Position numbers and translations under genes: made by a program. A stretch of DNA of 54,053 nucleotides, filler included, from Sluysia triapertura (taxonomy: Eukaryota): NCBI GenBank assembly GCA_046118255.1. It is 4 parts of 4 records of this genome, joined end to end, with 100 filler letters (N's around TTAATTAATTAA, not from the genome) between each part and the next. Parts side by side here need not be neighbours in the genome. Positions count along the whole stretch, not along the records: positions 1 to 12,937 come from JBJNIA010071283.1; 3 more parts are not named here. One strand, written 5' to 3'. Numbering within the stretch: the stretch's first letter is position 1; each line of letters begins with the position of its first letter. The notes under the pieces are model-generated. The model was given only the letters and a program-made list of their open reading frames with translations, had not been told where the DNA came from and did no database searches. Shown here piece by piece: positions 1 to 12,937 of this stretch.

Positions 1-76
1 AAAAAACTTATTTGGAAAACCGTGTAAAAGCGAAAACGTGTAAAACAAGTACCGTGTAAATCGGGGGATAGGTGTA
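1..76. mobile_element. Probable end of a Tc1/mariner/pogo-type DNA transposon or MITE
   Basis: CGTGTAAA occurs three times, ending CCGTGTAAATCGGGGGATAGGTG|TA, the layout of a TA-flanked TIR with subterminal repeats. The partner end is not in the window. Confidence 0.4.
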
Positions 77-139
77 TACTAAAACCAATTTTATATTTAA
101 ATCGTTCGCTTTTCAATATAATATCAATTTACACAAGCC

Positions 140-2777
140 CTTACCGACGATCCTATTTCATGATATGTACACACGAAAATATTTATTCAATCAGTTTCTA
201 ACATGTCCACGTTTTTCTGACGATATTTCAAAATATATGTTAAGAGGAATATTATTATAGATTTTAATAATTTTATCAGCAGCACAAATATGTAACAATT
301 AAAACAGCTTAACGATCTTTTTATAGATAAATTTTTATAGATAACCTATTGTCGAACAATCACTGGAATCGTACACAGAATTTGTAACAACTCTTCTGTC
401 TAATAAATGTTCAATTTGGCTTGGATCTAATGACATAGGATCCGGAAGTCCAAGTATTAGCGGTAAATTGCTTGTATTGTCCATACTGGTAAGAGCAAAG
501 ATGTTATTTTGTTGTTGGGTGTACAATGATGATGGAGATGAAACTGATAATCTCGATATTTGACTAAATTAATCCCATTGTTATTTGAAATATTATTATC
601 ATTATTATTATTATTATCATTATTATTATTATTATTATCATTATTATTATTATTATCATGTATACATTTACTTGGCATTAGAAAGGAATTTTTTCATTGT
701 TTCCCAACGGAAAACAATTTTGTAGCATAATTTATCTATTCGATCTTGGTTTGTGCTTGGTAGCTGAAATTATTAAAACATTAATATTTGAAATACAATT
801 ATCTTTAATACGTATGTTTACCACTTTTCAGGAAATAGCACATTATGTAGTTCGATTATGAAAATTTACATTTAATTACTTTGTACAAAATTCTTATTTC
901 AGATGTTTGTCTGTTTACCGATCTACTCAAATAAATACAAAACCGCTTGCTTTTAATTGGAGAAATAAATTGAATGTTATCAAAAGTAAAAAAACTACTT
1001 ACTAAACTAATAACTTATAGCGGTTAAAAAATCAGGTAAAAGTCAATAAAAATTGAACAGTATCGATGAATATAGTAATCCTGAGAAACAAGTTGTTGAA
1101 TTAATTTCTAAGAGCATTCTACTTATATTTTATCAGCTGCTAGTTTGAGCTAATTATTCGACTTATACAATAAATTACATTATGCAAGTGTATCAATCAC
1201 ATGTATGAATACAAAATTTTCTGAATAAGTTAAAATGACGTTATTTAAAATCTCACTATCATTTTATCTTGATATACTTCAGTATATTAATGTTGTTACT
1301 ATTTAATTGGTTTAAATTTTTCAACCAATCACATTTGTTAATTTAATGTGCGCGTGATTTCATTATTTAAATATCTTGTTTTAGTTAATATATTATATTA
1401 CAATTACGAATTTGTTTCCATGTGAAACGATGTCTGTCCAACTGTACCCATAAACAAACCATACTTACCGAAAAGAATCGAATTTTGGTGATATTTGGTT
1501 TAAATCAGGTTGGACAACACATCGACTCATACAAGTTACAAAATATTTAAATAACAAAAAAACATTTTATTTTTTTCGATCCAGAATTCACATTCTATAA
1601 ATTTTATAGAATAATCGTTAATTTTCAAATTTTGAATGTTTCGACAGAAAAAAATACATATAGAGCTACTTGTGGCTCTACAACCACGGATTTCTGATCA
1701 TCTGTTTAAATCTTTGATGCCGTGTTACGTAAATATTACGTAAGTAGTTTAAAGTTGATAATTATTTGATTTAAATCAATTAATCTAAGAATGATAATTT
1801 CTATATTTAGCACAATCAGACTCTAAACTGTACATTGAAATATTATGAACGAAAATTTACGGAGAAATTAAATGTACAACAATGAAGCTTTTATTCGTTG
1901 TCATGACGAAATGATTATGTATAGTGAAGCAGTGGAAAAACGATTCAAAGCGATCAATCTTGCAAGAAATCTGACTTATACTAAAATATAAATAATAACT
2001 AACACATCTTCTGGTACAATCTAATAAAATCTCCATACTTGTTTCATCAGATAAATTCATGGGATTCCACAAATTAACCAATAATAATTTATTAAAATCT
2101 TTCAACAAATCAGTATGCAACAATTGTTTCAACAAATAAAATTCTTTATTTATCATTAAATATTCTATCAAATTTAATAATATATTAACGAAACCATTTT
2201 TATTGGTCAATAAAATCAGCCAACCAAATTGAGATATTTCTTCATTAATTTCTGATTGAAAAGTTAACAGATTTAAACACAAATATCTTTCATCAGTTAC
2301 TGACCACTCTATACTCGTAACAGTATTACAATTGTTCAATTTTTCTTTATTAAATTTTTCATTAATAAAACGAATAAAAAAACGTTTTAAATGACAAAAT
2401 ATGTTTTGTGTTATTTCAATGCTTTGTTGAGGTATTATTTCGTATAGAATATGCTTAATAAAACAACGATATTTTGTTACATTACTTATCAACAAATCAC
2501 AGAATTCTGTTGATAAGTCTACACCAAATTTGGAAAAAATCAATAATAAATCCGACCAATTATAATTTTTATTTTGAAATAATTTTATTATTGTTGGAAA
2601 AATCGATTTGTAAGTGGAAGTAATTTGTAATTTATTATGTGTATTGCTGAACGGATACAGTAATTTGAATAACTGAATTGCCAGATAAGGTTTATCTGTG
2701 AAAACAGTGGTAAATTGTTTTATGAAAGTGGATATATCTGGTAAATTTGTGTTGAAATAGACGCATTCTAAAATTTT
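140..2777 (-). pseudogene. Multi-exon locus resembling the N-terminal helical region of ZFYVE26/spastizin, with disabled small exons
   Basis: Long open exon 2777-1861 (TTTCAG acceptor, GTAAAT donor, about 305 codons) containing ILLTNKNGFVNILLNLIEYLMINKEFYLLKQLLHTDLLKDFNKLLLVNLW. Downstream exon-like pieces (KCFLLFKYFVTCM near 1.5 kb; QDRIDKLCYKIVFRWETMKKFLSN at 763-672) fall in the order recalled for ZFYVE26. Several pieces between 800 and 1830 have stops in all frames. Family call is from memory only. Confidence 0.35.
591..658. repeat. (ATT/ATC)n microsatellite inside an intron
   Basis: Directly visible; lies between a GTAAAT donor (about 671) and an AATTTAG acceptor (about 564) on the minus strand. 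Confidence 0.9.
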
Positions 2778-5365
2778 CTGAAATTATTAATACATAATTA
2801 TTATTATTAATTATTATTATTAATTTATTATTATTAATTAATAATAATTATTATTAATTAATTATTATCAATTATTAGATATGTATGTTAAAAACTACTG
2901 GAATTTCGAACTTTAATTTACTGTATTGTTTTTTACTTTTATTATTTTATTGACACACATTCATTACAAGTATGTTTCTTTTCCATTTATTCAAATTGAT
3001 TTATTTCGTTCTAAAAATTAACTTAGACCTTGCTACCGGCAAAAGCTTTTATTCTAAATACTACGATTACATTACAATTTACATCGTCAATTCGTCTCTG
3101 GCAATACAGTCAAAATATTTATCTACACGAAAAATTAAAATATCATTATATCATTTGAATTAGTTGTTTCAGTTGATACCAAAATGCTATTTTAAATATT
3201 CAATATTGATCCTAAAATAATAATTCAACATATACACATAGGAATACTTATTTTAAAACAAATATAGCCGATAAATTCTTCAATTTTGTAAAGTTATAAT
3301 TTGTATATATATAATTATTCACGTTTTATTATAATTTATTATTTATATTTAATATTTTATGTTTTTATTTTTTATATTTTATAAAAAATTAAAATATTAT
3401 TAAAAAACATAAATTATTATTATTTTAAAAATTATAATAAAAAATTACATTAAAAATTATAATTAAAAAATTAAATTAAAAAAAAGATTCGAGAAAATTT
3501 GTTTTTATTAATTAAAATATTTTAATGTCTTTGTCACAATTATTAGTATATAAACAAAGACACAAATAAAGTTAACGCCATAATTGATAAACAAAGACTA
3601 CACGACAGACTAATAAAGCTCGCGGCAGAAAAATAAAGTCAGTCAAAAATAAAGCTACAATCAACGTCCAAATAAAGGAATAAAGTTAACGAAAATATAT
3701 AACAAAGATATATACGCAGCATTCAACAGCAATTTCAAGAAGCTGATATCAAGACGCAGTAGCACATATCCATCGATTTTATCCAATAATTAATATATTG
3801 AAATCATTTTTTGCAAGTAGTAAGTCTAATTTTTATAGATTTGAACTTCAATAGAGCCATATAATCTTACTTAAAATATTCCATTTCCGTTGGTCCGTAA
3901 GGCCAATGATAAAATCATTTTTTAACTAATTAAAATCCATGGCCGAGTCTCTAGTAGACTAGATCTCTTTAAAGAAAAAATATTGTAGTATTGTTATTAT
4001 TACTTTGATTATATTATTATTAAATTAATTGAATTTTGGATATTTAGTTGTAAATTAAACATTTATTTTTACGTTATTATTGTTATTTTAGTATTTTTAT
4101 TATAGATAATCAACATTAAAGATTTTATTATTTAATTTTGAATAATTAACAAGTTAATATTTTGAGCAAAAAAGTTCAGGATATTGCTTATTTGAGACAA
4201 TAATTTTTGATAAAGATAACGTTTAGCATAATGTGAATGTATAGAATCTAAAAATAAAAATATAAAAATAGCTGTATATAAAAATCTAAAAATTGTGTGT
4301 ATAATAAAATGTTATGTGTAAATTTATAGAATCTAAAAATATCTAATTATCAATTTTTTGTAAATAGAATTTTGATTTTTGTTTTAAATGGTATTATTAT
4401 TATTGTTATTTATTTAAAATCATTATTAATATTATTTTTTTAAAAAATTAAATAACATTTCTTTAAACTGATCAAAAAATATATAGGTCAAGGTGACCAT
4501 TTTTTCAATATAAGAATTGCAAGTCAGCACAATAAATCACAATAAATTTTTCGTGGATTTCTACAAATCTTTGGTGAAGTTTTTCACCAATTTTTCTCGG
4601 AACAATCACTTTATTTTGGAGCTTGAAAATTATCTGGTAAAAATCCGTTAGTTTGTTAATCGTAGGTTTATTCATTTTTTACTGATAGAAAATTAAAGAC
4701 ACTTTAATTAAATGTTTTTCGAAAACCCCTTTTTTAAGAAGGTGGTAATTATTACTTGAAAAGATTATAATCTTGTTAAAAGTGTATGTATATTTTGCTT
4801 ATATACAGTAATTTTTATATTGTACAATAATTATTTCATTAATACACTTTTCATTTTTATTTAAATTTCATTGAATAACTAACCCTAAGGTCTCCGATTT
4901 TAATCGGTGGTAAATTCCACGAAAAATCATAAATCAATTTGATAAGAGAAAATTAAGGTACGCGTTTTTACACGGTCGAAAAATCCAGGTAAAATATTTT
5001 TGAAGTTCTTTGATATTTTTAATAATTTAAGCTATCTTTTAGCGAATCGATTTTAAATTAACATTTACCTAAATTTGTTGCCTAAATAACATTCAAGAAG
5101 AATTTGTTACATTTTTAAAGAACTTATATAAGTATAATTGATTGCTGTACCTAATAGATTAAGCATAAAGCAACGTCATTTAAAATTTAATTGTCAAGCT
5201 TTCCACGTTATATTATCATTGAGAAGAATCTGATTGAGTACCTCCATAATTTCTTTTAAGATACTGCCTATAACTTAGCCCTTAAGTGCGTAATTGCACA
5301 TAAATAAAAGGTATAATTTTAAGAGAAAACTTTTACATTAATAAAGAGATTATTTATTGTCAAAT

Positions 5366-5413
5366 TCTGTAGCTACGTCTACTATACGTTCTAAATCGTA
5401 GACTACAGACGAA
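5366..5413 (+). ncRNA. Candidate structured element, copy 1 (12-bp stem, bulged A, 19-nt loop, followed by CGAA)
   Basis: TCTGTAG-CTACG-[TCTACTATACGTTCTAAAT]-CGTAG-A-CTACAGA-CGAA; covaries with copy 2. Confidence 0.45.
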
Positions 5414-5878
5414 CCCATTTAAATCCTATAATTGTTATAAGATAATTATTTTAAAATCATAACAATAAGATAACTCTAATAATTTCAGCTTTAAAATCTA
5501 TACTTATTTATTAAAATCTTGATCAAATTTGTACTAACAAAAAGAAATTGTTTCTTTTTGTTCAATTTATTATTATTATTATATTTTTTATTTTTCTTGT
5601 GAAAGAATCTTAGTTATTTAATAAATTAATTCATTGTTAATTCGTTATTATTTTACATTAAATAATAATAATAAATTAAAAGTTTGTATACACGATATGC
5701 AAAAAAGAAAAATCTTAAGTCATTTAGGAATAGTTATAATTCAATAGTTGTACTATGAAAACATATTTAAAAAAAGAGAAATAAACTAAGAGTAACATTA
5801 ATACATTTTAAAAGACCCAACATTAAGTAATTTGTAATCGCATTTTCAAGAGTAAGGAAAATTCTTTCGTAGCAATTT

Positions 5879-5926
5879 TCTGTGGATACGTCTACTTTAC
5901 GTTATAAACCGTATACCGCAGACGAA
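5879..5926 (+). ncRNA. Candidate structured element, copy 2
   Basis: TCTGTGG-ATACG-[TCTACTTTACGTTATAAAC]-CGTAT-A-CCGCAGA-CGAA; same geometry as copy 1, and all stem substitutions keep pairing. Confidence 0.45.
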
Positions 5927-8275
5927 GCCGTTTTTAAAATTATAATTATTAAGTTAAGAAAGTAAAGAAAAAACTAACAAGTCATTCAAAGAGAATTTAA
6001 AATTTTATTTGCACTTTCATCTCTTACATCAAAGACAAGCAAGAACTACAATTTTATACATAGAACTGTTTACATTAAGGTTTTAAAATCATTTAATATT
6101 AGTTAAATGAGAATAATTTTTAAAGAATTAAAATAAAATTTTTCTAATGCTTAAAGTTTAGTAATAAGTTTAAAGTCAACAAGTCTAATTCAAATAAACG
6201 ACTAATTCTCATTAAAAGTTAATTTTAACAATAATAAAATAAAAACAATAATGTAATAATATAATAGAATAATAATATAAAAAATAATAATTTTATAATA
6301 ATATACCAATAATATAGTAATGTAATATTATTTTGCTAAAATAATTTGATTTATATACGAAATAATAATATAAAATCATAATAATAATATTTTAAGTTAC
6401 AAGAAATATAATGCAACATATTATTATAATAACAAAAATAATTATTACCTTCGAAATTATATTCGAAATTATTTTATAATTGTATTCAAGATGGTTGTGA
6501 TTTACTTTTTTCTTTTAACTGAATTAAGATTTAAAAATTATTAGCGTTTATATTTATAATAATTGTTAAACAAAAAATTTACAAAGAAAATTAATATCAA
6601 GAAATAACACAAACTATTGAAAAATAAAATGTAAGTGTAAATTACATTATTTCACTTCGTTTATATAGTTTTTATTCTTAGTATATTATTTGCAATAAAT
6701 TATGTGAGGAAATTTATATAATTTACAATTTTATTTTTAATGATTTTGTAAACATTTTTCTGTTCTTTAATTAATTACATGTTTATTTATATTTACTGTC
6801 TATAAATTAAATTACTATATTAAAATTTATTGACAGTTTTTACCTAAACTAGAACAATGACATTAATCCATCTCTCTAGTTGCCTTGAAGATTTGATATA
6901 CTCTTATCTATATATTTACAATAATAAATATTCCAGAAAACACAGTCCATTAAATTAGTTAAGATTTTTTCAACATTGAATTCTGAAGTGATTACTTAAA
7001 TATGAAAATAATAAGCTGTTAAGTACGTTTTACGATAATTTCCAAATTAAAGCTTATTTAATTTCGATATGTCAAGCTTTTCCTTTAAAATTTGTATTAT
7101 AACATTTATAATACCAAGATTCTTTTACTCACCTGAATAAAATTTTAGGTTTTATTTTTTATACATTACTTTATTTATTAAATTTCATATATTATTGTTA
7201 TCCGTTTGCTATTATTTTCCTATGAAAGGAATTATAACGTTAATCATCGTCAGAAATTATATTAACAATTTAAAGTTTTTAAAACTAACAATGACTATTG
7301 TTGAAAAGCGTTTAAATTAATCAAAGAATAATTACTTAAATTATTTTCATTGTTTGTATCATTACTTTTACTTTTTATTATCAGAAATATATGAATATTG
7401 TTTATTATAAAAGAATTATATGACAGTTCAATTTGAATATTATTGTTTAGTTTATAATTATCGGGTGGCAGTTTCTGTAACCCACATATTTATATTTATA
7501 TTATTTTGAAATGTGTGAAGCAGGCACGGTCTATCAAATAAGTTCCCAAAAACTAAGAATATAAGATGCCCGACTTTAAGTACTTTTAGTATCATTTAGA
7601 GAAGTTTTTAAATATTAATTTTGTGTACGAGATTGTACACCTAAAACTAAATGTGTATTTTCATTATTTTATCAAAATGTAAAGATTAAGCTCAAGTCGC
7701 AGGCAGAATTTGTTTGTAAGTTACGCTGTTTACGTTTCGATTGTAGTTTCACCAATAGTAATGAATTTTTAATAGACATTTTTATATATGAACAATCGTG
7801 TGATCATATTGCAGAAAAATTGTTGACAGATAATCATGACCTTTTTATATTTAAATTATCATCGCAACCATCTAAAATAATTAAATTTGACAATAGAAAT
7901 CATTTAAAATAGGTTATTTCTATAAAAGAAAATTATTCTCCAAAAACTAAATTAATTTTCTAAAAGAAAAACTTATTTTCTAAAAAAGAAAAAATATTTT
8001 TAAAAACAGAAAATCCGAAGAAAGAACAATCCATTAATTTTGATTGTCTGATAACTAGTATATATACTAGCATCAGTGTAAAAAACAATTTTTTTATTTT
8101 AAAAAATTTTTAATGCACTGACTATAATTAAATTAATTTTTTCAAAGATACGGCATCAAGTTATTTATTCAGTTGGATAATGGACAATTATTTGATTTTT
8201 GTAAGTCTGTTTGGTTCTTGTGGTCAAAATACTATAGTTTAATTTTCCTTCTTCGATTTGTTAAACTTCGTAAAA

Positions 8276-8346
8276 TGGACTGACCGGGGATCGAATCCGG
8301 GGCCATCGTCTGCCCAGTCGATGCTGTACCACTGAGCTATCAGCCC
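8276..8346 (-). tRNA. tRNA-Ala-like pseudogene or tRNA-derived repeat (defective anticodon arm)
   Basis: GGGCTGA TA GCTC AGTGGTA CAGC A TCGAC TGGGCA GACGA TGGCC CCGGA TTCGATC CCCGG TCAGTCC A, followed at once by TTTT. It has a 7-bp acceptor stem with G3:U70 and A/B-box-like motifs, but one mismatch each in the D, anticodon and T stems and a 6-nt anticodon loop. Confidence 0.7.
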
Positions 8347-9739
8347 CGTCTAACAATTTCATTTTTATTATATACAATTTTATCAAATGGCACTTTTAGG
8401 CCTTTTACCCCAACAGATTTAATGAAGTGAAAAATTGATATTTAAAATTAAATAAGAATCATAATTAAATCCCTGAAAGGGTTTTAATTATAAAATTATA
8501 ATTGTTATTTTTTGCTTTTCTTATATCATATTTGAGTTTCTTTAATTGTTTATTAATAAACTTTGAAAGGTTTTGGATATTGTAGTGGGTTCTATAACTA
8601 TTATGTTATCTTTATTATATTGTAATAAAATCATTAATTTTGTCTAAAATAATCCTGATATTTAGAAATTTGTTACAATTTAGATTACCAATTATTTTTT
8701 TCTTATATTAATAAAATTTTAATTCTTGTCAAGTTTAGTTTCGATTAAGGTCGTTTGCACAACAAAATATTGAAATTGTAATTAAAACTTATTCAAACAA
8801 AACAAAGTAACAAAAGGGAAATTTTATATTAAATACGTAACAGTAAACATAAAACGATAATAACAGTCTAATAACACAAAACGTTTTACCTATAACAAAT
8901 ATACAGCTAGTATTCGATGTCATTAATTCATCGTAATTAGATAGTGGTAGCGATTGACGTTCGGTTTTGACTTTGACAATCGTAATAAAAACATTAATGC
9001 ATGTTTCAGATAATTCAGCATTATTAATTATTAATTAAACGTTATTAATGTTATGGTTTCACTAATATCAAGCAATACATATTACAAAAAGAAGTACTCA
9101 ATCGAATATTTAAAATTTGAGTTTTTTCTTACTAAATATATTAATTATATTATTTGAAGAAATTTTCACATGAATCAAAGCATAGGTACCACCATATTCA
9201 ATTAATAATTTATCAAACACTTTACTTTCATTGATAAAAACAGAGTAAGTATTCGAATTAATTTTAAATTAACCTTTACTTGTGTGTGAAAATTTAGACA
9301 ATTTGAAAACTATTAATTCGTTTTGTATTTTTTGCAAAACAGTATTTATTTTATAATTAACATGTAACAATACATTATCAAAACAATCACGACATTTTGT
9401 AAATTAAATGATTAAAATAGGTGAATAAACGTCAAGTGCCATTCCATCAACTACTATAATAATTTAACTTTTAACTTTATCAGTGAGGTTTTTACTAGCT
9501 TTACTAATAGTCATGTTATTATTGCCTGTGGTTCGTTCATTTACCAGACGTATTTAAATTGTAAGTTTTTAAAACAAATACGTTGTACATTATGAGCGTG
9601 AGTATATTTAGTATCAAAATCTGTTTTAAATTTAACATCTAAACTTTTCACAATTTGCATATGTATACGATTTCAATGCATGTCTAAAATTTAAATAAAG
9701 ACAATGTATTTATTTGACGAAAATTTCTTTTAACGAAAT

Positions 9740-10265
9740 AAATCTAGTTATAAATATGGCATTAGAAGTACGTGGAACATCTGATTCAAAATCTGCAAGA
9801 CTGATTCTGAGCGCAATATACCAATTGCATTGAATAGGAAATTCATCAGAAGTAATTTTATTGATGATATTTTAAATAATTTTTAAATATTTAAAAATTA
9901 TTTAAATTATCGTGATATCGATAAAAATGCAATGGAAAGAGTATTAAATTATTACAACATTGCTTTTGAGAGATACTCTAAAATAAAACAATAAAATAAA
10001 CATTTACAACATGCTATTCCGGTTATAATACGGAATGATTATGAAAGATTGATAAATATGTACGACAAAGTTCCTATCGAGACTATTAAGTTGAATTGCT
10101 AATGTTAAATATAATGTTAAATTACTGAAAAATTATAAAATATTTAAAAGGGCAAAGTTCTTTCTGTTTCAGAAATATTATAATATATGCTTTATTTTGA
10201 TTACTTGTTTTACAGTATTTACAAGGAGGATATAGTTCTTTCTATTTCAGAAACATTATAATGAG
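9740..10265 (+). mobile_element. Decayed 3' end of a CR1/L2-like LINE
   Basis: Degenerate ALEVRGTS motif (compare YGxExWG). Tail ATTACTGAAAAATTATAAAATATTTAAAAGGGCAAAGTTCTTTCTGTTTCAGAAATATTAT is shared with 33390-33453. Confidence 0.35.
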
Positions 10266-11779
10266 TTATATTTCAAGAAAGTTTGAATAATTATTTCATT
10301 GAAGAAGTGGCAGTAGTGAAAATAATAATAATAGTGATAATAATACACATGTACATATAGAAACGTTCGTGTGTACAAAGTTTTGCAACGGCAATAATAA
10401 TATGCGACATATAAACAATTATGATATTATCAGGACTGTGCTTATGTTTAGTACTTAATGTGCGGCAGTTTAATATATTGTAGTTTACTTAATAACTGGT
10501 TTAATTTATGTTGGTGTTTGCTTGTGATTATTATAAGTTGATCTGGAGTTCACCACACTTATTAATTTAAGTTTAATTAAATTCCGAAATCATTAGTGAA
10601 GTGCGTGAATGATTACAATAAATTTACCAAGAATATAATTTTGATTAGATTACCTCGAATCATAGATTTAAGTTTTCAAGCATAAGATACGATGACCAAC
10701 TTGTAATTCATAATTTTGTCAATATGACTTCATTCAAATTGTCTTCCCAACACAAATGTACAATCTTTAAATAAATCACATGATACTATAAACAATCATA
10801 TTCAACAATTCGTAAAACCCATCACAGAACACAACAAGCACTTAATATTTTCAGAAAACTCAACTCACCAATAACAACTCATTTAAACAACCTAATATTA
10901 AACACTTCAATATATATTTCCAGCAATTTCAAACATTTAACTTTTAACATTGGCAGCAAATTAGCATAATATTATATTTTACCATCATAACCAAATAAGA
11001 AAAATTGTGTTACACCATTTTATACATAAATTCGAGTCAAATTTGAAAATTATAAATTGCAAAATCATTCCACAAGTTTACCAATTCTTAACATATCAAA
11101 TTATTTGATAAACTCAGTACCTTGATTGTTCCAAATATTTCATTGTAACACTTCTATATTTTCAAATCAATCCTTCCACGATTTGTTTACTCAAATATCC
11201 TTCGAACATCTCAATTTTAATACATTATTTCCACGAAAATATGCATAAACGTATTTATACATTTTCATCCGAAATTTTTGAGTTGTGTTCTCAAGATCCC
11301 AAGAAAGGGAAGAAGAAAAAAGAAAGAAAAAATTATAATTTAATATTGATAATAATGACAATAATAAATTTTTTAATTAAATTAAAATAATAAATATTTT
11401 AATTAAAATTACATAAGAAAATTTTACTGGCTGTCAAGCCAATTACTACTACACACTTTATCATCTTGCATTGTGTGCAAATAATCGGCCGGCATGGTTA
11501 GACACAAAGTTATGTACTTAAACATTGTGCATTTATAAAGATTAGAAAAAAATTGATTAGTGTAACACAAAAAAATTGCATTATCTTTGAAATTACACAA
11601 AAATCAGTATAGATAATCCATTATTGTTTATCACTATATCGTCATCATGTCGGAATAAAGGTTATAAATAAATCCCGATTACCAATGTCATCAAATGGAA
11701 CAGGATCAATTACAGATATACCGGTTAGAGCCATCCGTAAGATGTAAGAAGTCAAAAATGTTATTTATAACTATCAAGA

Positions 11780-12230
11780 AACAACAAAGTCACAGTAGTC
11801 TTAATGATCCTGCACCTTTCACATGGTCAAATCAAGTTAGAAATGAACGGTTGATCCATTTCCTCTTGATTTAACATTAAGTGGATCGTAACTGTTCAGC
11901 ATTTTACCAACACAAGCCGTAACATGTAAAGCTGTTCAACTGTAAAACGTCTTTTACTTCCAAATCTTCTGCCAATTATGCACCACTTTTTTGAAAATAA
12001 ACATTCTCAATTTCATATTTGTCCGCCTTATACCATTTCTCCAACCATACTTACGATAAAAAAAACATAAATGAAACGATGGACAAGTGGCTTAAAGCTG
12101 CGTGGAATTCTTTTAGCAAGAAACTTGTTGAAAAACGTTTTTTTATCATCGTTCCTCGGTTGGAAAGGACCCGAAAGTTGCATCCAAGCTTTTTAAGCTG
12201 TATAGGAATCAGAAGGAACGGAATCTGACA
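11780..12230 (-). pseudogene. Decayed ankyrin-repeat fragment
   Basis: Reads KSGA*LAEDLEVKDVL..TALHVTACVGK across a stop and a frameshift, matching the ankyrin GAD...D..G.TALH.A pattern. Confidence 0.35.
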
Positions 12231-12937
12231 TTCTCGATGAATAAAAAATAATTGATACTTGATTTATTGACGGAAAATAACTGTTTCAAAAAAGTTAAAA
12301 TTTATATAGTGTAGAAATTGTATTTGGCATTGTTATTAATAGATTTTCACGTTGTTATTAGATTTTGTGCATATCTAGTTTGAACACAATAAATAAATTA
12401 CAAATAAATAAAACTCCGTTTCAAGAATTAAAGTTAACATTAGATTACCTATTGTATTTGATCTGGTCCACTTGTGACATCATCTTAGAAGATTTCACAC
12501 GTACTTATTAGTTCAAATTTTTGACAAAGCTATCCGAACTTACATCTTAAAAGTTGATCCGAATAAATTCGAAATCTTGTAGCCTCGTCTTCTATTAGGA
12601 TATAAATGGTCGATTACAGGCGAACCCATAATAATAAACTATATTTGCAATAAAGTTTAATCGTAAATTACACAAATACATAAGTTGATATTATGAATGT
12701 GCTTACTGAAAATTATAGGTATTATTGTATAGATTCCTGGATTATATTTTGTTATTTAAGTGTTTCTTATTACTTTTGGTGTTTCAGAAGATGTTTTGAG
12801 AGCTGTTAACAATTTTTTAGTTTAAAGTGAATATTCATGGAATTTTAGACATATCCAGACATCGTAAAGTAAATACAATAAAATTTTATTTAAAATATTT
12901 TTACATTAAATCATTTACAAAAATGTTTTGTAAATAA

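What the first reader, a model, noticed from the sequence alone, without database searches (positions are those of the whole stretch)
5366..5935. Two copies of an unrecognised hairpin that differ by compensatory base changes
Seen: copies 513 bp apart in otherwise featureless AT-rich DNA share a 7+5-bp stem with a bulged A, a 19-nt loop and a 3' CGAA. All five stem differences keep pairing: A-T to G-C, C-G to A-T (both double changes) and T-A to T.G. The wobble only works on the plus strand, which hints at RNA. A conserved alternative pairing CGTCT/AGACG also exists. Inference: selection on structure, so a small ncRNA, ribozyme-like or cis-regulatory element, or a transposon terminal hairpin. 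I do not recognise it as tRNA, snRNA, SL RNA, hammerhead, HDV or twister.
Basis: partly seen in the sequence, partly recalled or inferred. Interest (0 to 1): 0.7.

Follow-up and report, generated by a model that had tools for sequence, protein, structure and literature searches.

The report
Conserved hairpin in retrotransposon LTRs
The two hairpins are real and under selection for structure, but they are not free-standing RNA genes: each sits near the end of a long terminal repeat (LTR) fragment of a very abundant, tRNA-Lys-primed LTR retrotransposon lineage, about 60 bases before the primer binding site.

Summary
Observation confirmed and extended. Hairpin 1 (5366-5409) and hairpin 2 (5879-5922) have the 7+5 bp stem, bulged A and 19-nt loop described, and all five stem differences keep pairing (chance about 7e-4).

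They are not in featureless DNA. Each lies about 55 nt before the 3' end of an LTR fragment (A: 5283-5464; B: 5466-5979) from dispersed families with hundreds of copies.

Evidence for LTR identity:
- Complete copies run TGTAAAT...YNYAACA.
- Four of four complete B copies have exact 4-bp target-site duplications.
- At 123 places the LTR end is followed by ATTATT plus an 18-nt primer binding site. That site is exactly complementary to a tRNA-Lys(UUU) 3' end encoded in this genome.
- A gag-like ORF with a CCHC knuckle follows.

Sixteen such junctions were found through the internal leader, not through the hairpin. Fifteen carry the hairpin at the same place, one of them with a deleted 5' arm. At least eight families have different stems. 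Ten of 12 pairs show compensatory double changes, 92.6% of cells pair, and the bulged A is kept.

It is therefore a cis-acting R/U5 leader stem-loop of retrotransposon RNA. It is a new member of a known kind. Its exact role (reverse-transcription initiation, poly(A) hairpin or packaging) is inferred, not shown.

The parts
5283..5464 (+). 3' fragment of an 'A-type' LTR (R/U5-containing part), ending in the LTR terminus CATAACA (5458-5464)
   Evidence: 30 genomic copies are 81-94% identical over about 5283-5464 and share a sharp 3' end. Longer copies are about 1.3 kb and run TGTAAAT...ATAACA. The 5' limit is approximate, because an unrelated repeat ends at 5293.
5366..5409 (+). Hairpin 1: arms 5366-5377 with 5397-5401 plus 5403-5409, bulged A at 5402, 19-nt loop 5378-5396
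   Evidence: It scores 76.6 bits with covariance model R1.
5428..5436 (+). Conserved U5 box ATAATTGTT. In intact 5' LTRs it is complementary to the LTR end plus spacer (AACAATTAT).
   Evidence: 96.7% of cells pair across 17 LTR-PBS junctions, but the columns are almost invariant, so pairing is not proven.
5466..5979 (+). 3' fragment, about 514 bp, of a 'B-type' LTR, ending in ACTAACA (5973-5979). It lacks roughly the first 700 bp of full copies.
   Evidence: 29 genomic copies are 70-92% identical with a common 3' end at 5979/5980. Full B copies are about 1.2 kb with 4-bp target duplications.
5879..5922 (+). Hairpin 2: arms 5879-5890 with 5910-5914 plus 5916-5922, bulged A at 5915, loop 5891-5909
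   Evidence: It scores 69.5 bits with R1.
12571..12629 (+). Third, decayed copy of the same hairpin, from another LTR family remnant. It is followed by CGAACCC and a U5-like TATATTTGC box.
   Evidence: R1 scores 34.6 bits, E 4.5e-7, and several stem pairs are broken.
4950..5293 (+). Unrelated high-copy repeat ('X') that abuts and overlaps the start of the A fragment. It is not part of the LTR family.
   Evidence: There are 666 candidates. In 34 of the 39 other places listed the match ends at query position 344, which is window 5293.

Best explanation
Each hairpin is the conserved stem-loop in the R/U5 portion of an LTR. The LTRs belong to a multi-family LTR-retrotransposon lineage, probably Ty3/gypsy-like, that primes reverse transcription with tRNA-Lys(UUU).

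The window holds two truncated LTR fragments lying head-to-tail, of families A and B, plus a third decayed one at 12571-12629.

In the element's genomic RNA the stem-loop lies about 60 nt 5' of the primer binding site. The order is hairpin, (A/G)CGRACCC, a U-rich box, the LTR end ..AACA, ATTATT, then the PBS. If the hairpin lies in R, it is also present at the 3' end of the RNA.

These points are shown:
- LTR identity.
- Position of the hairpin relative to the PBS.
- Structural conservation through compensatory change in active lineages.
- Neutral decay of the stem in inserted copies.

This is inferred. The hairpin acts in cis in the plus-strand RNA during replication. My preferred reading, about 40% given the LTR identity, is a leader element that helps place or activate the tRNA primer, or helps minus-strand strong-stop synthesis and transfer. 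That would resemble retroviral U5 stems and the A-rich loop of HIV-1. The loop's near-invariant UAAA could touch the CUUUUAA anticodon loop of the primer.

Other roles remain open:
- About 30%: an R/U5-border 'poly(A) hairpin' presenting an AUAAA-like signal.
- About 20%: a Gag-binding packaging or dimerisation signal. The invariant bulged A and fixed loop motifs fit protein recognition.
- The remaining 10% or so covers roles not listed.
For: Repeat status:
- BLAST of either copy finds more than 430 candidates at 86-97% identity.
- A pattern spanning both arms hits 207 times, against 0 for the reversed control.
- With model R1, all 150 scored places reach 61 bits or more.
- Summed contig depth is about 6,000-11,000 at the hairpins against about 15-60 in the single-copy flank beyond 6421.

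LTR identity:
- Full copies are 1.2-1.3 kb, TGTAAAT...YNYAACA. The 3' end matches the published integrase-recognition consensus YNYAACA; only TGT matches the 5' consensus TGTTRNR (PMC3601003).
- Four of four complete B copies have exact 4-bp target duplications: GATA, CAAT, GTAC, ATAT.
- In L064 the LTR end is followed by ATTATT and TGGCGCCCGAATTGGGAC. A leader and a gag-like ORF with a CCHC knuckle follow.
- This junction occurs 123 times at 1 mismatch or fewer.
- The PBS is the exact complement of GTCCCAATTCGGGCG+CCA, which ends a tRNA-Lys(UUU)-like sequence in this genome.
- The gag piece matches P0121 (E 1.1e-8), which carries Pfam Retrotrans_gag PF03732.

Structure:
- 16 junctions were found through the internal leader, so they were ascertained independently of the hairpin. 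Fifteen show the hairpin at the same place, one of them (L112) with a deletion in its 5' arm. Stems differ, for example CTCGAAGCAACG/CGTTGACTTCGAG.
- On alignment A3, 92.6% of cells pair and 10 of 12 pairs have double changes. None of 500 shuffles reach this, and slid controls give 27-50%.
- RNAalifold predicts the same helix apart from its loop-closing pair, 11 of the 12 pairs.
- 7 of 8 further family members fold into it on their own.

Strand: there are 11 G.U cells against 1 A.C cell between families. Private changes within families are symmetric, 17 G.U against 16 A.C.
Against: - No pol gene and no pair of LTRs flanking one internal region was seen. The one internal piece fetched, L116, is non-coding.
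- The U3/R/U5 borders are unmapped and no RNA run is on record. Whether the hairpin is in R or in U5, and whether it is transcribed at all, is therefore inferred.
- Target duplications are clear for only about 1 of 5 complete A copies.
- Many copies look 5'-truncated with intact 3' ends. That is unusual for solo LTRs. I attribute it to unrelated U3 regions among subfamilies, and partly to deletions, but I did not prove this.
- The loop motif is AUAAA-like in only about 12 of 18 sequences and is never AAUAAA.
- Loop-to-anticodon complementarity is only 4-5 A-U pairs in AT-rich sequence.
Confidence: 0.85

Rival explanations
1. The hairpin is the 3'-tail stem-loop of SINE-like or non-autonomous non-LTR retroposons. 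A partner LINE reverse transcriptase recognises it, as in 'stringent' LINE/SINE pairs such as eel UnaL2/UnaSINE1. This was my own first reading.
For: - All copies share a sharp 3' end while 5' extents vary.
- Different 5' bodies share one 3' module of about 100-175 nt.
- There are no ORFs beside most copies.
- The A fragment's exact 3' end abuts a truncated B fragment in the window, which could be a template jump.
- A head-to-head pair of 3' modules occurs in C240871.
Against: - 123 copies are followed by a spacer and an 18-nt tRNA primer binding site, then gag.
- Full copies have TG..CA termini and fixed 4-bp target duplications.
- No LINE carrying this tail was found among the 30 best RT loci, though their flanks reach only 1.5 kb either side of the RT match.
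- The hairpin is about 55 nt from the end and no terminal repeat follows it.
Confidence: 0.04
2. The inverted repeat acts at the DNA level. It could be a protein-binding palindrome in the LTR, such as a promoter or enhancer site or an integrase or host-factor site. It could be a hairpin in strong-stop DNA. It could be a subterminal hairpin of a rolling-circle (Helitron-like) or other DNA transposon.
For: - In family A each arm contains the palindrome GTAG(A)CTAC.
- Most copies lack obvious target duplications.
- The hairpin is subterminal and strand-specific, as in Helitrons.
Against: - Family B and the six other families break the short palindromes but keep the long stem.
- Wobble pairs are tolerated on the + strand only, 11 G.U against 1 A.C.
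- There is no 5'-TC or 3'-CTRR terminus and no A|T or T|T insertion site. The flanking bases are random.
- There are no terminal inverted repeats beyond TGT/ACA.
- A double-stranded DNA binding site would conserve sequence, not complementarity.
Confidence: 0.06
3. It is a free-standing small ncRNA or self-cleaving ribozyme gene that has been multiplied in the genome.
For: - The stem covaries.
- The loop has conserved motifs.
Against: - There is no Rfam family at E<=10, including hammerhead, HDV, twister, pistol and hatchet.
- The hairpin always sits at one fixed position inside an LTR, between conserved U3-proximal sequence and the U5 end and PBS.
- No promoter-like unit travels with it on its own.
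Confidence: 0.02

Closest known systems
Retroviral 5'-leader stem-loops upstream of the PBS: the HIV-1 poly(A) hairpin and the HIV-1/HIV-2 U5 stem with its A-rich loop that contacts the tRNA-Lys3 anticodon loop
   Same: - It is a plus-strand RNA hairpin in R/U5, tens of nucleotides 5' of a tRNA-Lys PBS.
- Structure is kept by covariation while sequence drifts.
- The loop carries an A-rich, AUAAA-like motif.
- The primer has a U-rich anticodon loop, CUUUUAA here. HIV data are from PMC3185550 and PMC5961354.
   Different: - The host element is a retrotransposon in an AT-rich eukaryote, not a lentivirus.
- There is no canonical AAUAAA.
- An invariant 1-nt bulged A splits a 5-bp and a 6-7-bp helix.
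- The loop is 19 nt with a UCYUC motif.
- The distance to the PBS, about 60 nt, is larger than for the HIV-1 A-rich loop.
- No function has been tested.
General LTR architecture of animal Metaviridae and retroviruses (Benachenhou et al. 2013, PMC3601003)
   Same: - The TG...CA short inverted repeats are present, with a YNYAACA 3' end.
- An AATAAA-like motif is followed by a T/GT-rich stretch near the 3' end.
- R/U5 is more conserved than U3.
- That paper links residual conservation in long R regions to stem-loops.
   Different: - That work modelled sequence motifs. It did not describe this hairpin or this lineage.
- The 5' end here is TGTAAAT rather than TGTTRNR.
3' stem-loops of 'stringent' LINE/SINE pairs (from my own knowledge; not checked in a paper here)
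   Same: It is a conserved stem-loop near a precisely defined 3' end, shared by families with different bodies.
   Different: These elements have LTR termini, 4-bp target duplications, a tRNA PBS and gag. No LINE partner was found.

Membership tests
LTR retrotransposon (LTR) | Terminal TG...CA short inverted repeats | tested here: met
   Full A and B copies begin TGTAAAT and end (C/A)(A/T)TAACA. The 3' end fits YNYAACA from PMC3601003.
LTR retrotransposon (LTR) | Short target-site duplication of fixed length flanking the LTR or element | tested here: met
   4 of 4 complete B copies have exact 4-bp duplications: L047 GATA, L055 CAAT, L059 GTAC, L049 ATAT. The chance per copy is about 0.01. The result is weaker for A, with about 1 of 5 clear.
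LTR retrotransposon (LTR) | Primer binding site complementary to a host tRNA 3' end just inside the 5' LTR | tested here: met
   ..AACA+ATTATT+TGGCGCCCGAATTGGGAC occurs at 123 places and in 16 of 16 fetched junctions. It is the exact complement of a genomic tRNA-Lys(UUU)-like 3' end plus CCA.
LTR retrotransposon (LTR) | Internal gag (and pol) genes | tested here: inconclusive
   A decayed gag-like ORF with a CCHC knuckle lies downstream of the PBS in L064 and L022. It matches P0121, which carries PF03732. The gag pieces themselves gave no direct Pfam hit. Pol was not seen, and L116 is non-coding.
LTR retrotransposon (LTR) | Two direct LTRs flanking one internal region; polypurine tract before the 3' LTR | not tested
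One possible PPT, GATGGGGAAG before the LTR in L026, is anecdotal.
Ty3/gypsy (Metaviridae) | pol domain order PR-RT-RH-IN and a gypsy-type RT | not tested
   Only indirect evidence exists, from similarity to Retrotrans_gag. AT-rich gypsy-type RT loci exist in the genome but could not be linked to these LTRs.
Lentivirus-type poly(A) hairpin | Canonical AAUAAA/AUUAAA presented in the hairpin at the R/U5 border | tested here: not met
   The loop has (A/C/G)(U/C)AAA(U/C/A). About 12 of 18 sequences have AUAAA and none has AAUAAA or AUUAAA. The R/U5 border is unknown.
Any Rfam family (hammerhead, HDV, twister, tRNA-like and others) | Covariance-model match | tested here: not met
   cmscan at E<=10 over 1-12937 finds only a tRNA-like match at 8276-8346.
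Helitron / Helentron 3' end | 5'-TC, 3'-CTRR, hairpin 10-12 nt from the end, insertion at A|T or T|T | tested here: not met
   The ends are TGT.../...AACA, the hairpin is about 55 nt from the end, and the flanking bases are random.
LINE-mobilised SINE tail | The same tail at the 3' end of an autonomous LINE; variable-length target duplications | tested here: not met
   No hairpin was found in the 30 best RT loci. Over all copies, flank matches barely exceed those of mismatched flanks, 4.24 against 3.72 nt, and the complete B copies have a fixed 4 bp.

The most novel reading that the evidence does not exclude
The hairpin is a second primer-docking site. [quoted passage not shown] This would be an independently evolved counterpart of the HIV-1 A-rich-loop/anticodon contact, in an ancient retrotransposon lineage. 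It would be kept across at least 8 families that share only the PBS, the U5 end and this structure.
Probability: 0.15. Interest if true: 0.6.

Novelty: new member of a known kind. Interest (0 to 1): 0.4.

Why it matters
For genome annotation, this explains a 'mystery' covarying hairpin as part of LTRs. Covariance model R1 marks the LTR 3' ends of a whole lineage. All 150 places it scored in this genome reach 61 bits or more, even where U3 regions are unrelated.

For retroelement biology, well-supported RNA structures in the leaders of non-retroviral LTR retrotransposons are, to my knowledge, few. Here ten of twelve pairs covary across families, with a fixed bulged A and fixed loop motifs next to a tRNA-Lys PBS. 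That gives a clean natural system for asking which leader structures LTR elements need.

It is not a new class of RNA.

Tried and rejected
1. tRNA, tmRNA and Rfam scans gave nothing at the hairpins.
2. SINE/LINE tail hypothesis. I looked for ORFs upstream of 60 copies and for the hairpin in 30 RT loci, and found none. I dropped it once the PBS and gag were found.
3. Helitron, MITE and TIR readings. The termini, flanks and inverted repeats do not fit. The 157-nt foldback in C240871 is a single case.
4. A generic target-duplication test over all copies was barely above the null, 4.24 against 3.72 nt. Only copies with exactly defined 5' ends gave clean 4-bp duplications.
5. Empty-site or polymorphism search with the one public run, contigs of the same organism, gave no informative joint.
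6. Organism identification. A gypsy pol search gave at most 45% identity and no close named relatives, so the organism remains unknown.
7. Pol classification:
   - The internal piece L116 is non-coding.
   - The gag pieces have no direct Pfam hit.
8. Relatives elsewhere. Two metagenome scans with the PBS found nothing with the spacer, and only chance bacterial matches with the PBS alone.
9. Alternative pairing CGTCT/AGACG is complementary in 84% of cells but shows no covariation; 255 of 500 shuffles do as well.
10. A second stem, U5 box with LTR end plus spacer, pairs in 96.7% of cells but is invariant, so it is unproven.

A per-column majority of the 44-nt hairpin was used inside only as a counting reference; the script's output printed it, but it is not reproduced in this report.
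Full report
**1. The observation**

The window is AT-rich, at 15-31% GC. Two hairpins lie on the + strand, 513 bp apart, at 5366-5409 and 5879-5922. Each has a lower helix of 7 pairs, a bulged A on the 3' arm, an upper helix of 5 pairs and a 19-nt loop, followed by CGAA.

The five stem differences are A-T to G-C, C-G to A-T and T-A to T.G. All keep pairing. ViennaRNA returns this hairpin as the minimum-energy and centroid structure for both + strands. On the - strand copy 2 folds into something else.

I placed eight random substitutions on the 42-nt hairpin in a simulation. At least five stem changes with every pair kept occurred at a frequency of 7e-4.

The phrase 'otherwise featureless DNA' does not hold. 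The two copies are alike for about 100 nt.

**2. Both hairpins sit in high-copy repeats**

The genome has 619 Mb in 263,945 contigs.

| Measure | Result |
|---|---|
| BLAST of copy 1 | 437 candidates, 92-97% identity |
| BLAST of copy 2 region | 430 candidates, 86-94% identity |
| Pattern anchored on both arms | 207 hits; reversed control 0 |
| Summed contig depth at the hairpins, one public run of the same organism | about 6,000-11,000, against about 15-60 in the single-copy flank beyond 6421 |

All copies share a sharp 3' end...CATAACA in family A and ...ACTAACA in family B. In the window these ends are at 5464 and 5979. At least four families (A, B, C, D) share only the last 100-175 nt.

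I first took this for a LINE/SINE-type 3' tail. I found no ORFs beside the copies and no hairpin in 30 RT loci.

**3. They are LTRs**

- Complete A copies (about 1.3 kb) and B copies (about 1.2 kb) begin TGTAAAT and end YNYAACA. The 3' end is the integrase-recognition motif reported for animal Metaviridae and retroviral LTRs (PMC3601003).
- All four B copies with an exactly defined 5' end have perfect 4-bp target duplications: GATA, CAAT, GTAC, ATAT.
- In locus L064 the B-type LTR end is followed by ATTATT and then TGGCGCCCGAATTGGGAC. A leader of about 240 nt follows, then a decayed ORF with the motif ...KFNGNEEELCDFLFKYDIVAEANGWSEIEKIK and, further on, a CCHC zinc knuckle.
- A piece of this ORF matches protein P0121 (E 1.1e-8, 40% identity), which carries Pfam Retrotrans_gag.
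- The internal leader is itself repeated, with 309 candidates.
- The junction 'LTR end + spacer + PBS' occurs 123 times at one mismatch or fewer, against 0 for the control.
- The 18-nt site is the exact complement of GTCCCAATTCGGGCG+CCA. That sequence ends a tRNA-Lys(UUU)-like sequence found eight times in the genome at one mismatch or fewer, five of them exact, with anticodon loop CUUUUAA.

Pol was not seen, and no two-LTR element was seen in a single contig.

**4. The structure is conserved by covariation across families**

I fetched sixteen LTR-PBS junctions that were found through the internal leader, so their choice did not depend on the hairpin. Fifteen carry a hairpin at the same distance from the LTR end. 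One of these (L112) has a deletion in its 5' arm, and one junction (L100) has lost the hairpin altogether.

The stems differ widely. Examples are CTCGAAGCAACG/CGTTGACTTCGAG, CCTATAATTGCG/CGCAAATTATAGG and CCTGTGAGTACG/CGTGCATCATAGG. All have a single bulged A. In one family the bulge sits one position over.

| Measure on the 18-sequence alignment A3 | Result |
|---|---|
| Cells forming a standard pair | 92.6% |
| Pairs with changes on both sides | 10 of 12 |
| Shuffles reaching the observed values | 0 of 500 |
| Cells paired when the 3' partner is slid 1-3 columns | 27-50% |
| RNAalifold consensus | same helix, 11 of the 12 pairs (all but the loop-closing one) |
| Further members folding into it on their own | 7 of 8 |

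A more distant family in L022 keeps the architecture with a 12-nt loop.

The loop keeps a 5' UCYUC and a near-invariant (N)UAAA(Y). (A/G)CGRACCC follows the stem.

Between families there are 11 G.U cells and 1 A.C cell. This points to the + strand, which is the sense strand of the element.

Within families A and B, private changes are all one-sided: 17 in A and 36 in B. G.U and A.C are balanced among them, 17 against 16. This is the neutral decay expected of dead insertions.

**5. Other pairings**

A U5 box (ATAATTGTT, window 5428-5436) is complementary to the LTR end plus spacer (AACAATTAT) in 96.7% of cells. The columns are almost invariant, so this second stem next to the PBS is possible but unproven.

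**6. Local anatomy of the window**

- An unrelated repeat with 666 candidates ends at 5293.
- The A fragment runs from about 5283 to 5464.
- One base follows, A5465.
- The B fragment runs 5466-5979 and lacks roughly the first 700 bp of full B copies.
- Neither fragment is followed by a PBS.
- Model R1 finds a third, decayed hairpin at 12571-12629, at 34.6 bits.

I cannot say how the abutting fragments arose. Nested insertion followed by deletion, or recombination at microhomology, are both possible. The X/A junction shares the sequence TAAG.GC.TAAT.

**7. How it probably works**

This much is shown: the hairpin is a structure-selected, sense-strand element at a fixed place in R/U5, about 60 nt 5' of a tRNA-Lys PBS. 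The role below is inferred by position and by analogy with retroviral leaders.

- Support for primer placement, initiation or strong-stop transfer. [quoted passage not shown] Here the loop UAAA faces a primer with the loop CUUUUAA.
- An R/U5-border poly(A) hairpin. In HIV-1 the AAUAAA in the 5' poly(A) hairpin loop regulates both RNA production and packaging (PMC5961354). Here the loop motif is only AUAAA-like, but it is followed by a T/GT-rich box, as in generic LTRs.
- A Gag-binding packaging signal. The fixed bulged A and loop motifs fit protein recognition.

No RNA data exist for this organism in the runs on hand. The choice among these roles is therefore open.

**8. Verdict**

The finding is real, and the inference of structural selection is right. 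The element is a cis-acting leader stem-loop of an abundant LTR-retrotransposon lineage. It is not a new ncRNA or ribozyme, and it is not a DNA-transposon palindrome. It is a new member of a known kind, and interest is moderate.

Noticed in passing
window 8258-8415 (-): A repeat of about 160 bp with at least 2,493 candidates in the genome. It consists of about 70 nt (TTGGGGTAAAAGGCCTAAAAG...) followed by a tRNA-like sequence (Rfam tRNA 42 bits at 8276-8346, which ARAGORN did not call). The same repeat is inserted into hairpin-bearing LTRs in L010 and L061. The tRNA part is at the 3' side, which is unusual for a SINE.
   Followed up: partly
L117, L118 (G000:C221106:1555-1660, C244732:2320-2425): The loci that match the PBS hold only the 3' part of a tRNA-Lys(UUU), from about position 27 to the acceptor end, followed by a T-run. 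Both are preceded by unrelated AT-rich DNA and followed by the same flank (TTAATTT.TGCACAT). ARAGORN finds no complete tRNA in the 106-nt pieces. The 5' half may lie further upstream, or these may be half-tRNA repeats.
   Followed up: no
L066-L071, L077, L078, L084, L088 versus L072-L095: The assembly holds two kinds of RT-bearing contigs. One kind is AT-rich (28-34% GC) with gypsy-type RT. The other is GC-rich (45-58% GC) with LINE and gypsy ORFs whose C-terminal motifs look vertebrate-like to me, for example ...FKKSLKTHLF.... This may mean DNA of a second organism, such as a host, in the assembly.
   Followed up: no
L040 1501-1827 (G000:C240871:5118-5444): Two B-type LTR 3' fragments lie head-to-head, with 157-nt arms that are 88% complementary and a 13-nt spacer. 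Both LTR ends point outwards. The origin is unexplained.
   Followed up: partly
window 4950-5293, 4392-4443, 6220-6305: Further dispersed repeats surround the finding. One family, with 666 candidates, ends sharply at 5293 and shares about 10 nt with the start of the A fragment. Short AT-rich repeats at 4392-4443 and 6220-6305 recur in several loci and show high contig depth.
   Followed up: partly
L013 and L037, upstream of the short LTR copies: An A-type and a B-type 'short' copy share the same upstream sequence (..TAATGATTATGAGTGTTG(A/C)CCACTAC). This suggests that apparent 5' truncations are partly mosaic or alternative U3 regions rather than true truncations.
   Followed up: no
window 1857-2543 (-) and 457-678 (-): The only long ORF in the piece (228 aa) has no Pfam match. 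A 73-aa ORF encodes a poly-Asn/Asp run, which is typical of very AT-rich genomes.
   Followed up: partly
one search list: C13205, C31117: Two copies with different loops share a double change, G to T in both GTAG motifs of the arms. It breaks two adjacent pairs around the bulge. This is probably a subfamily marker and is not compensatory.
   Followed up: no
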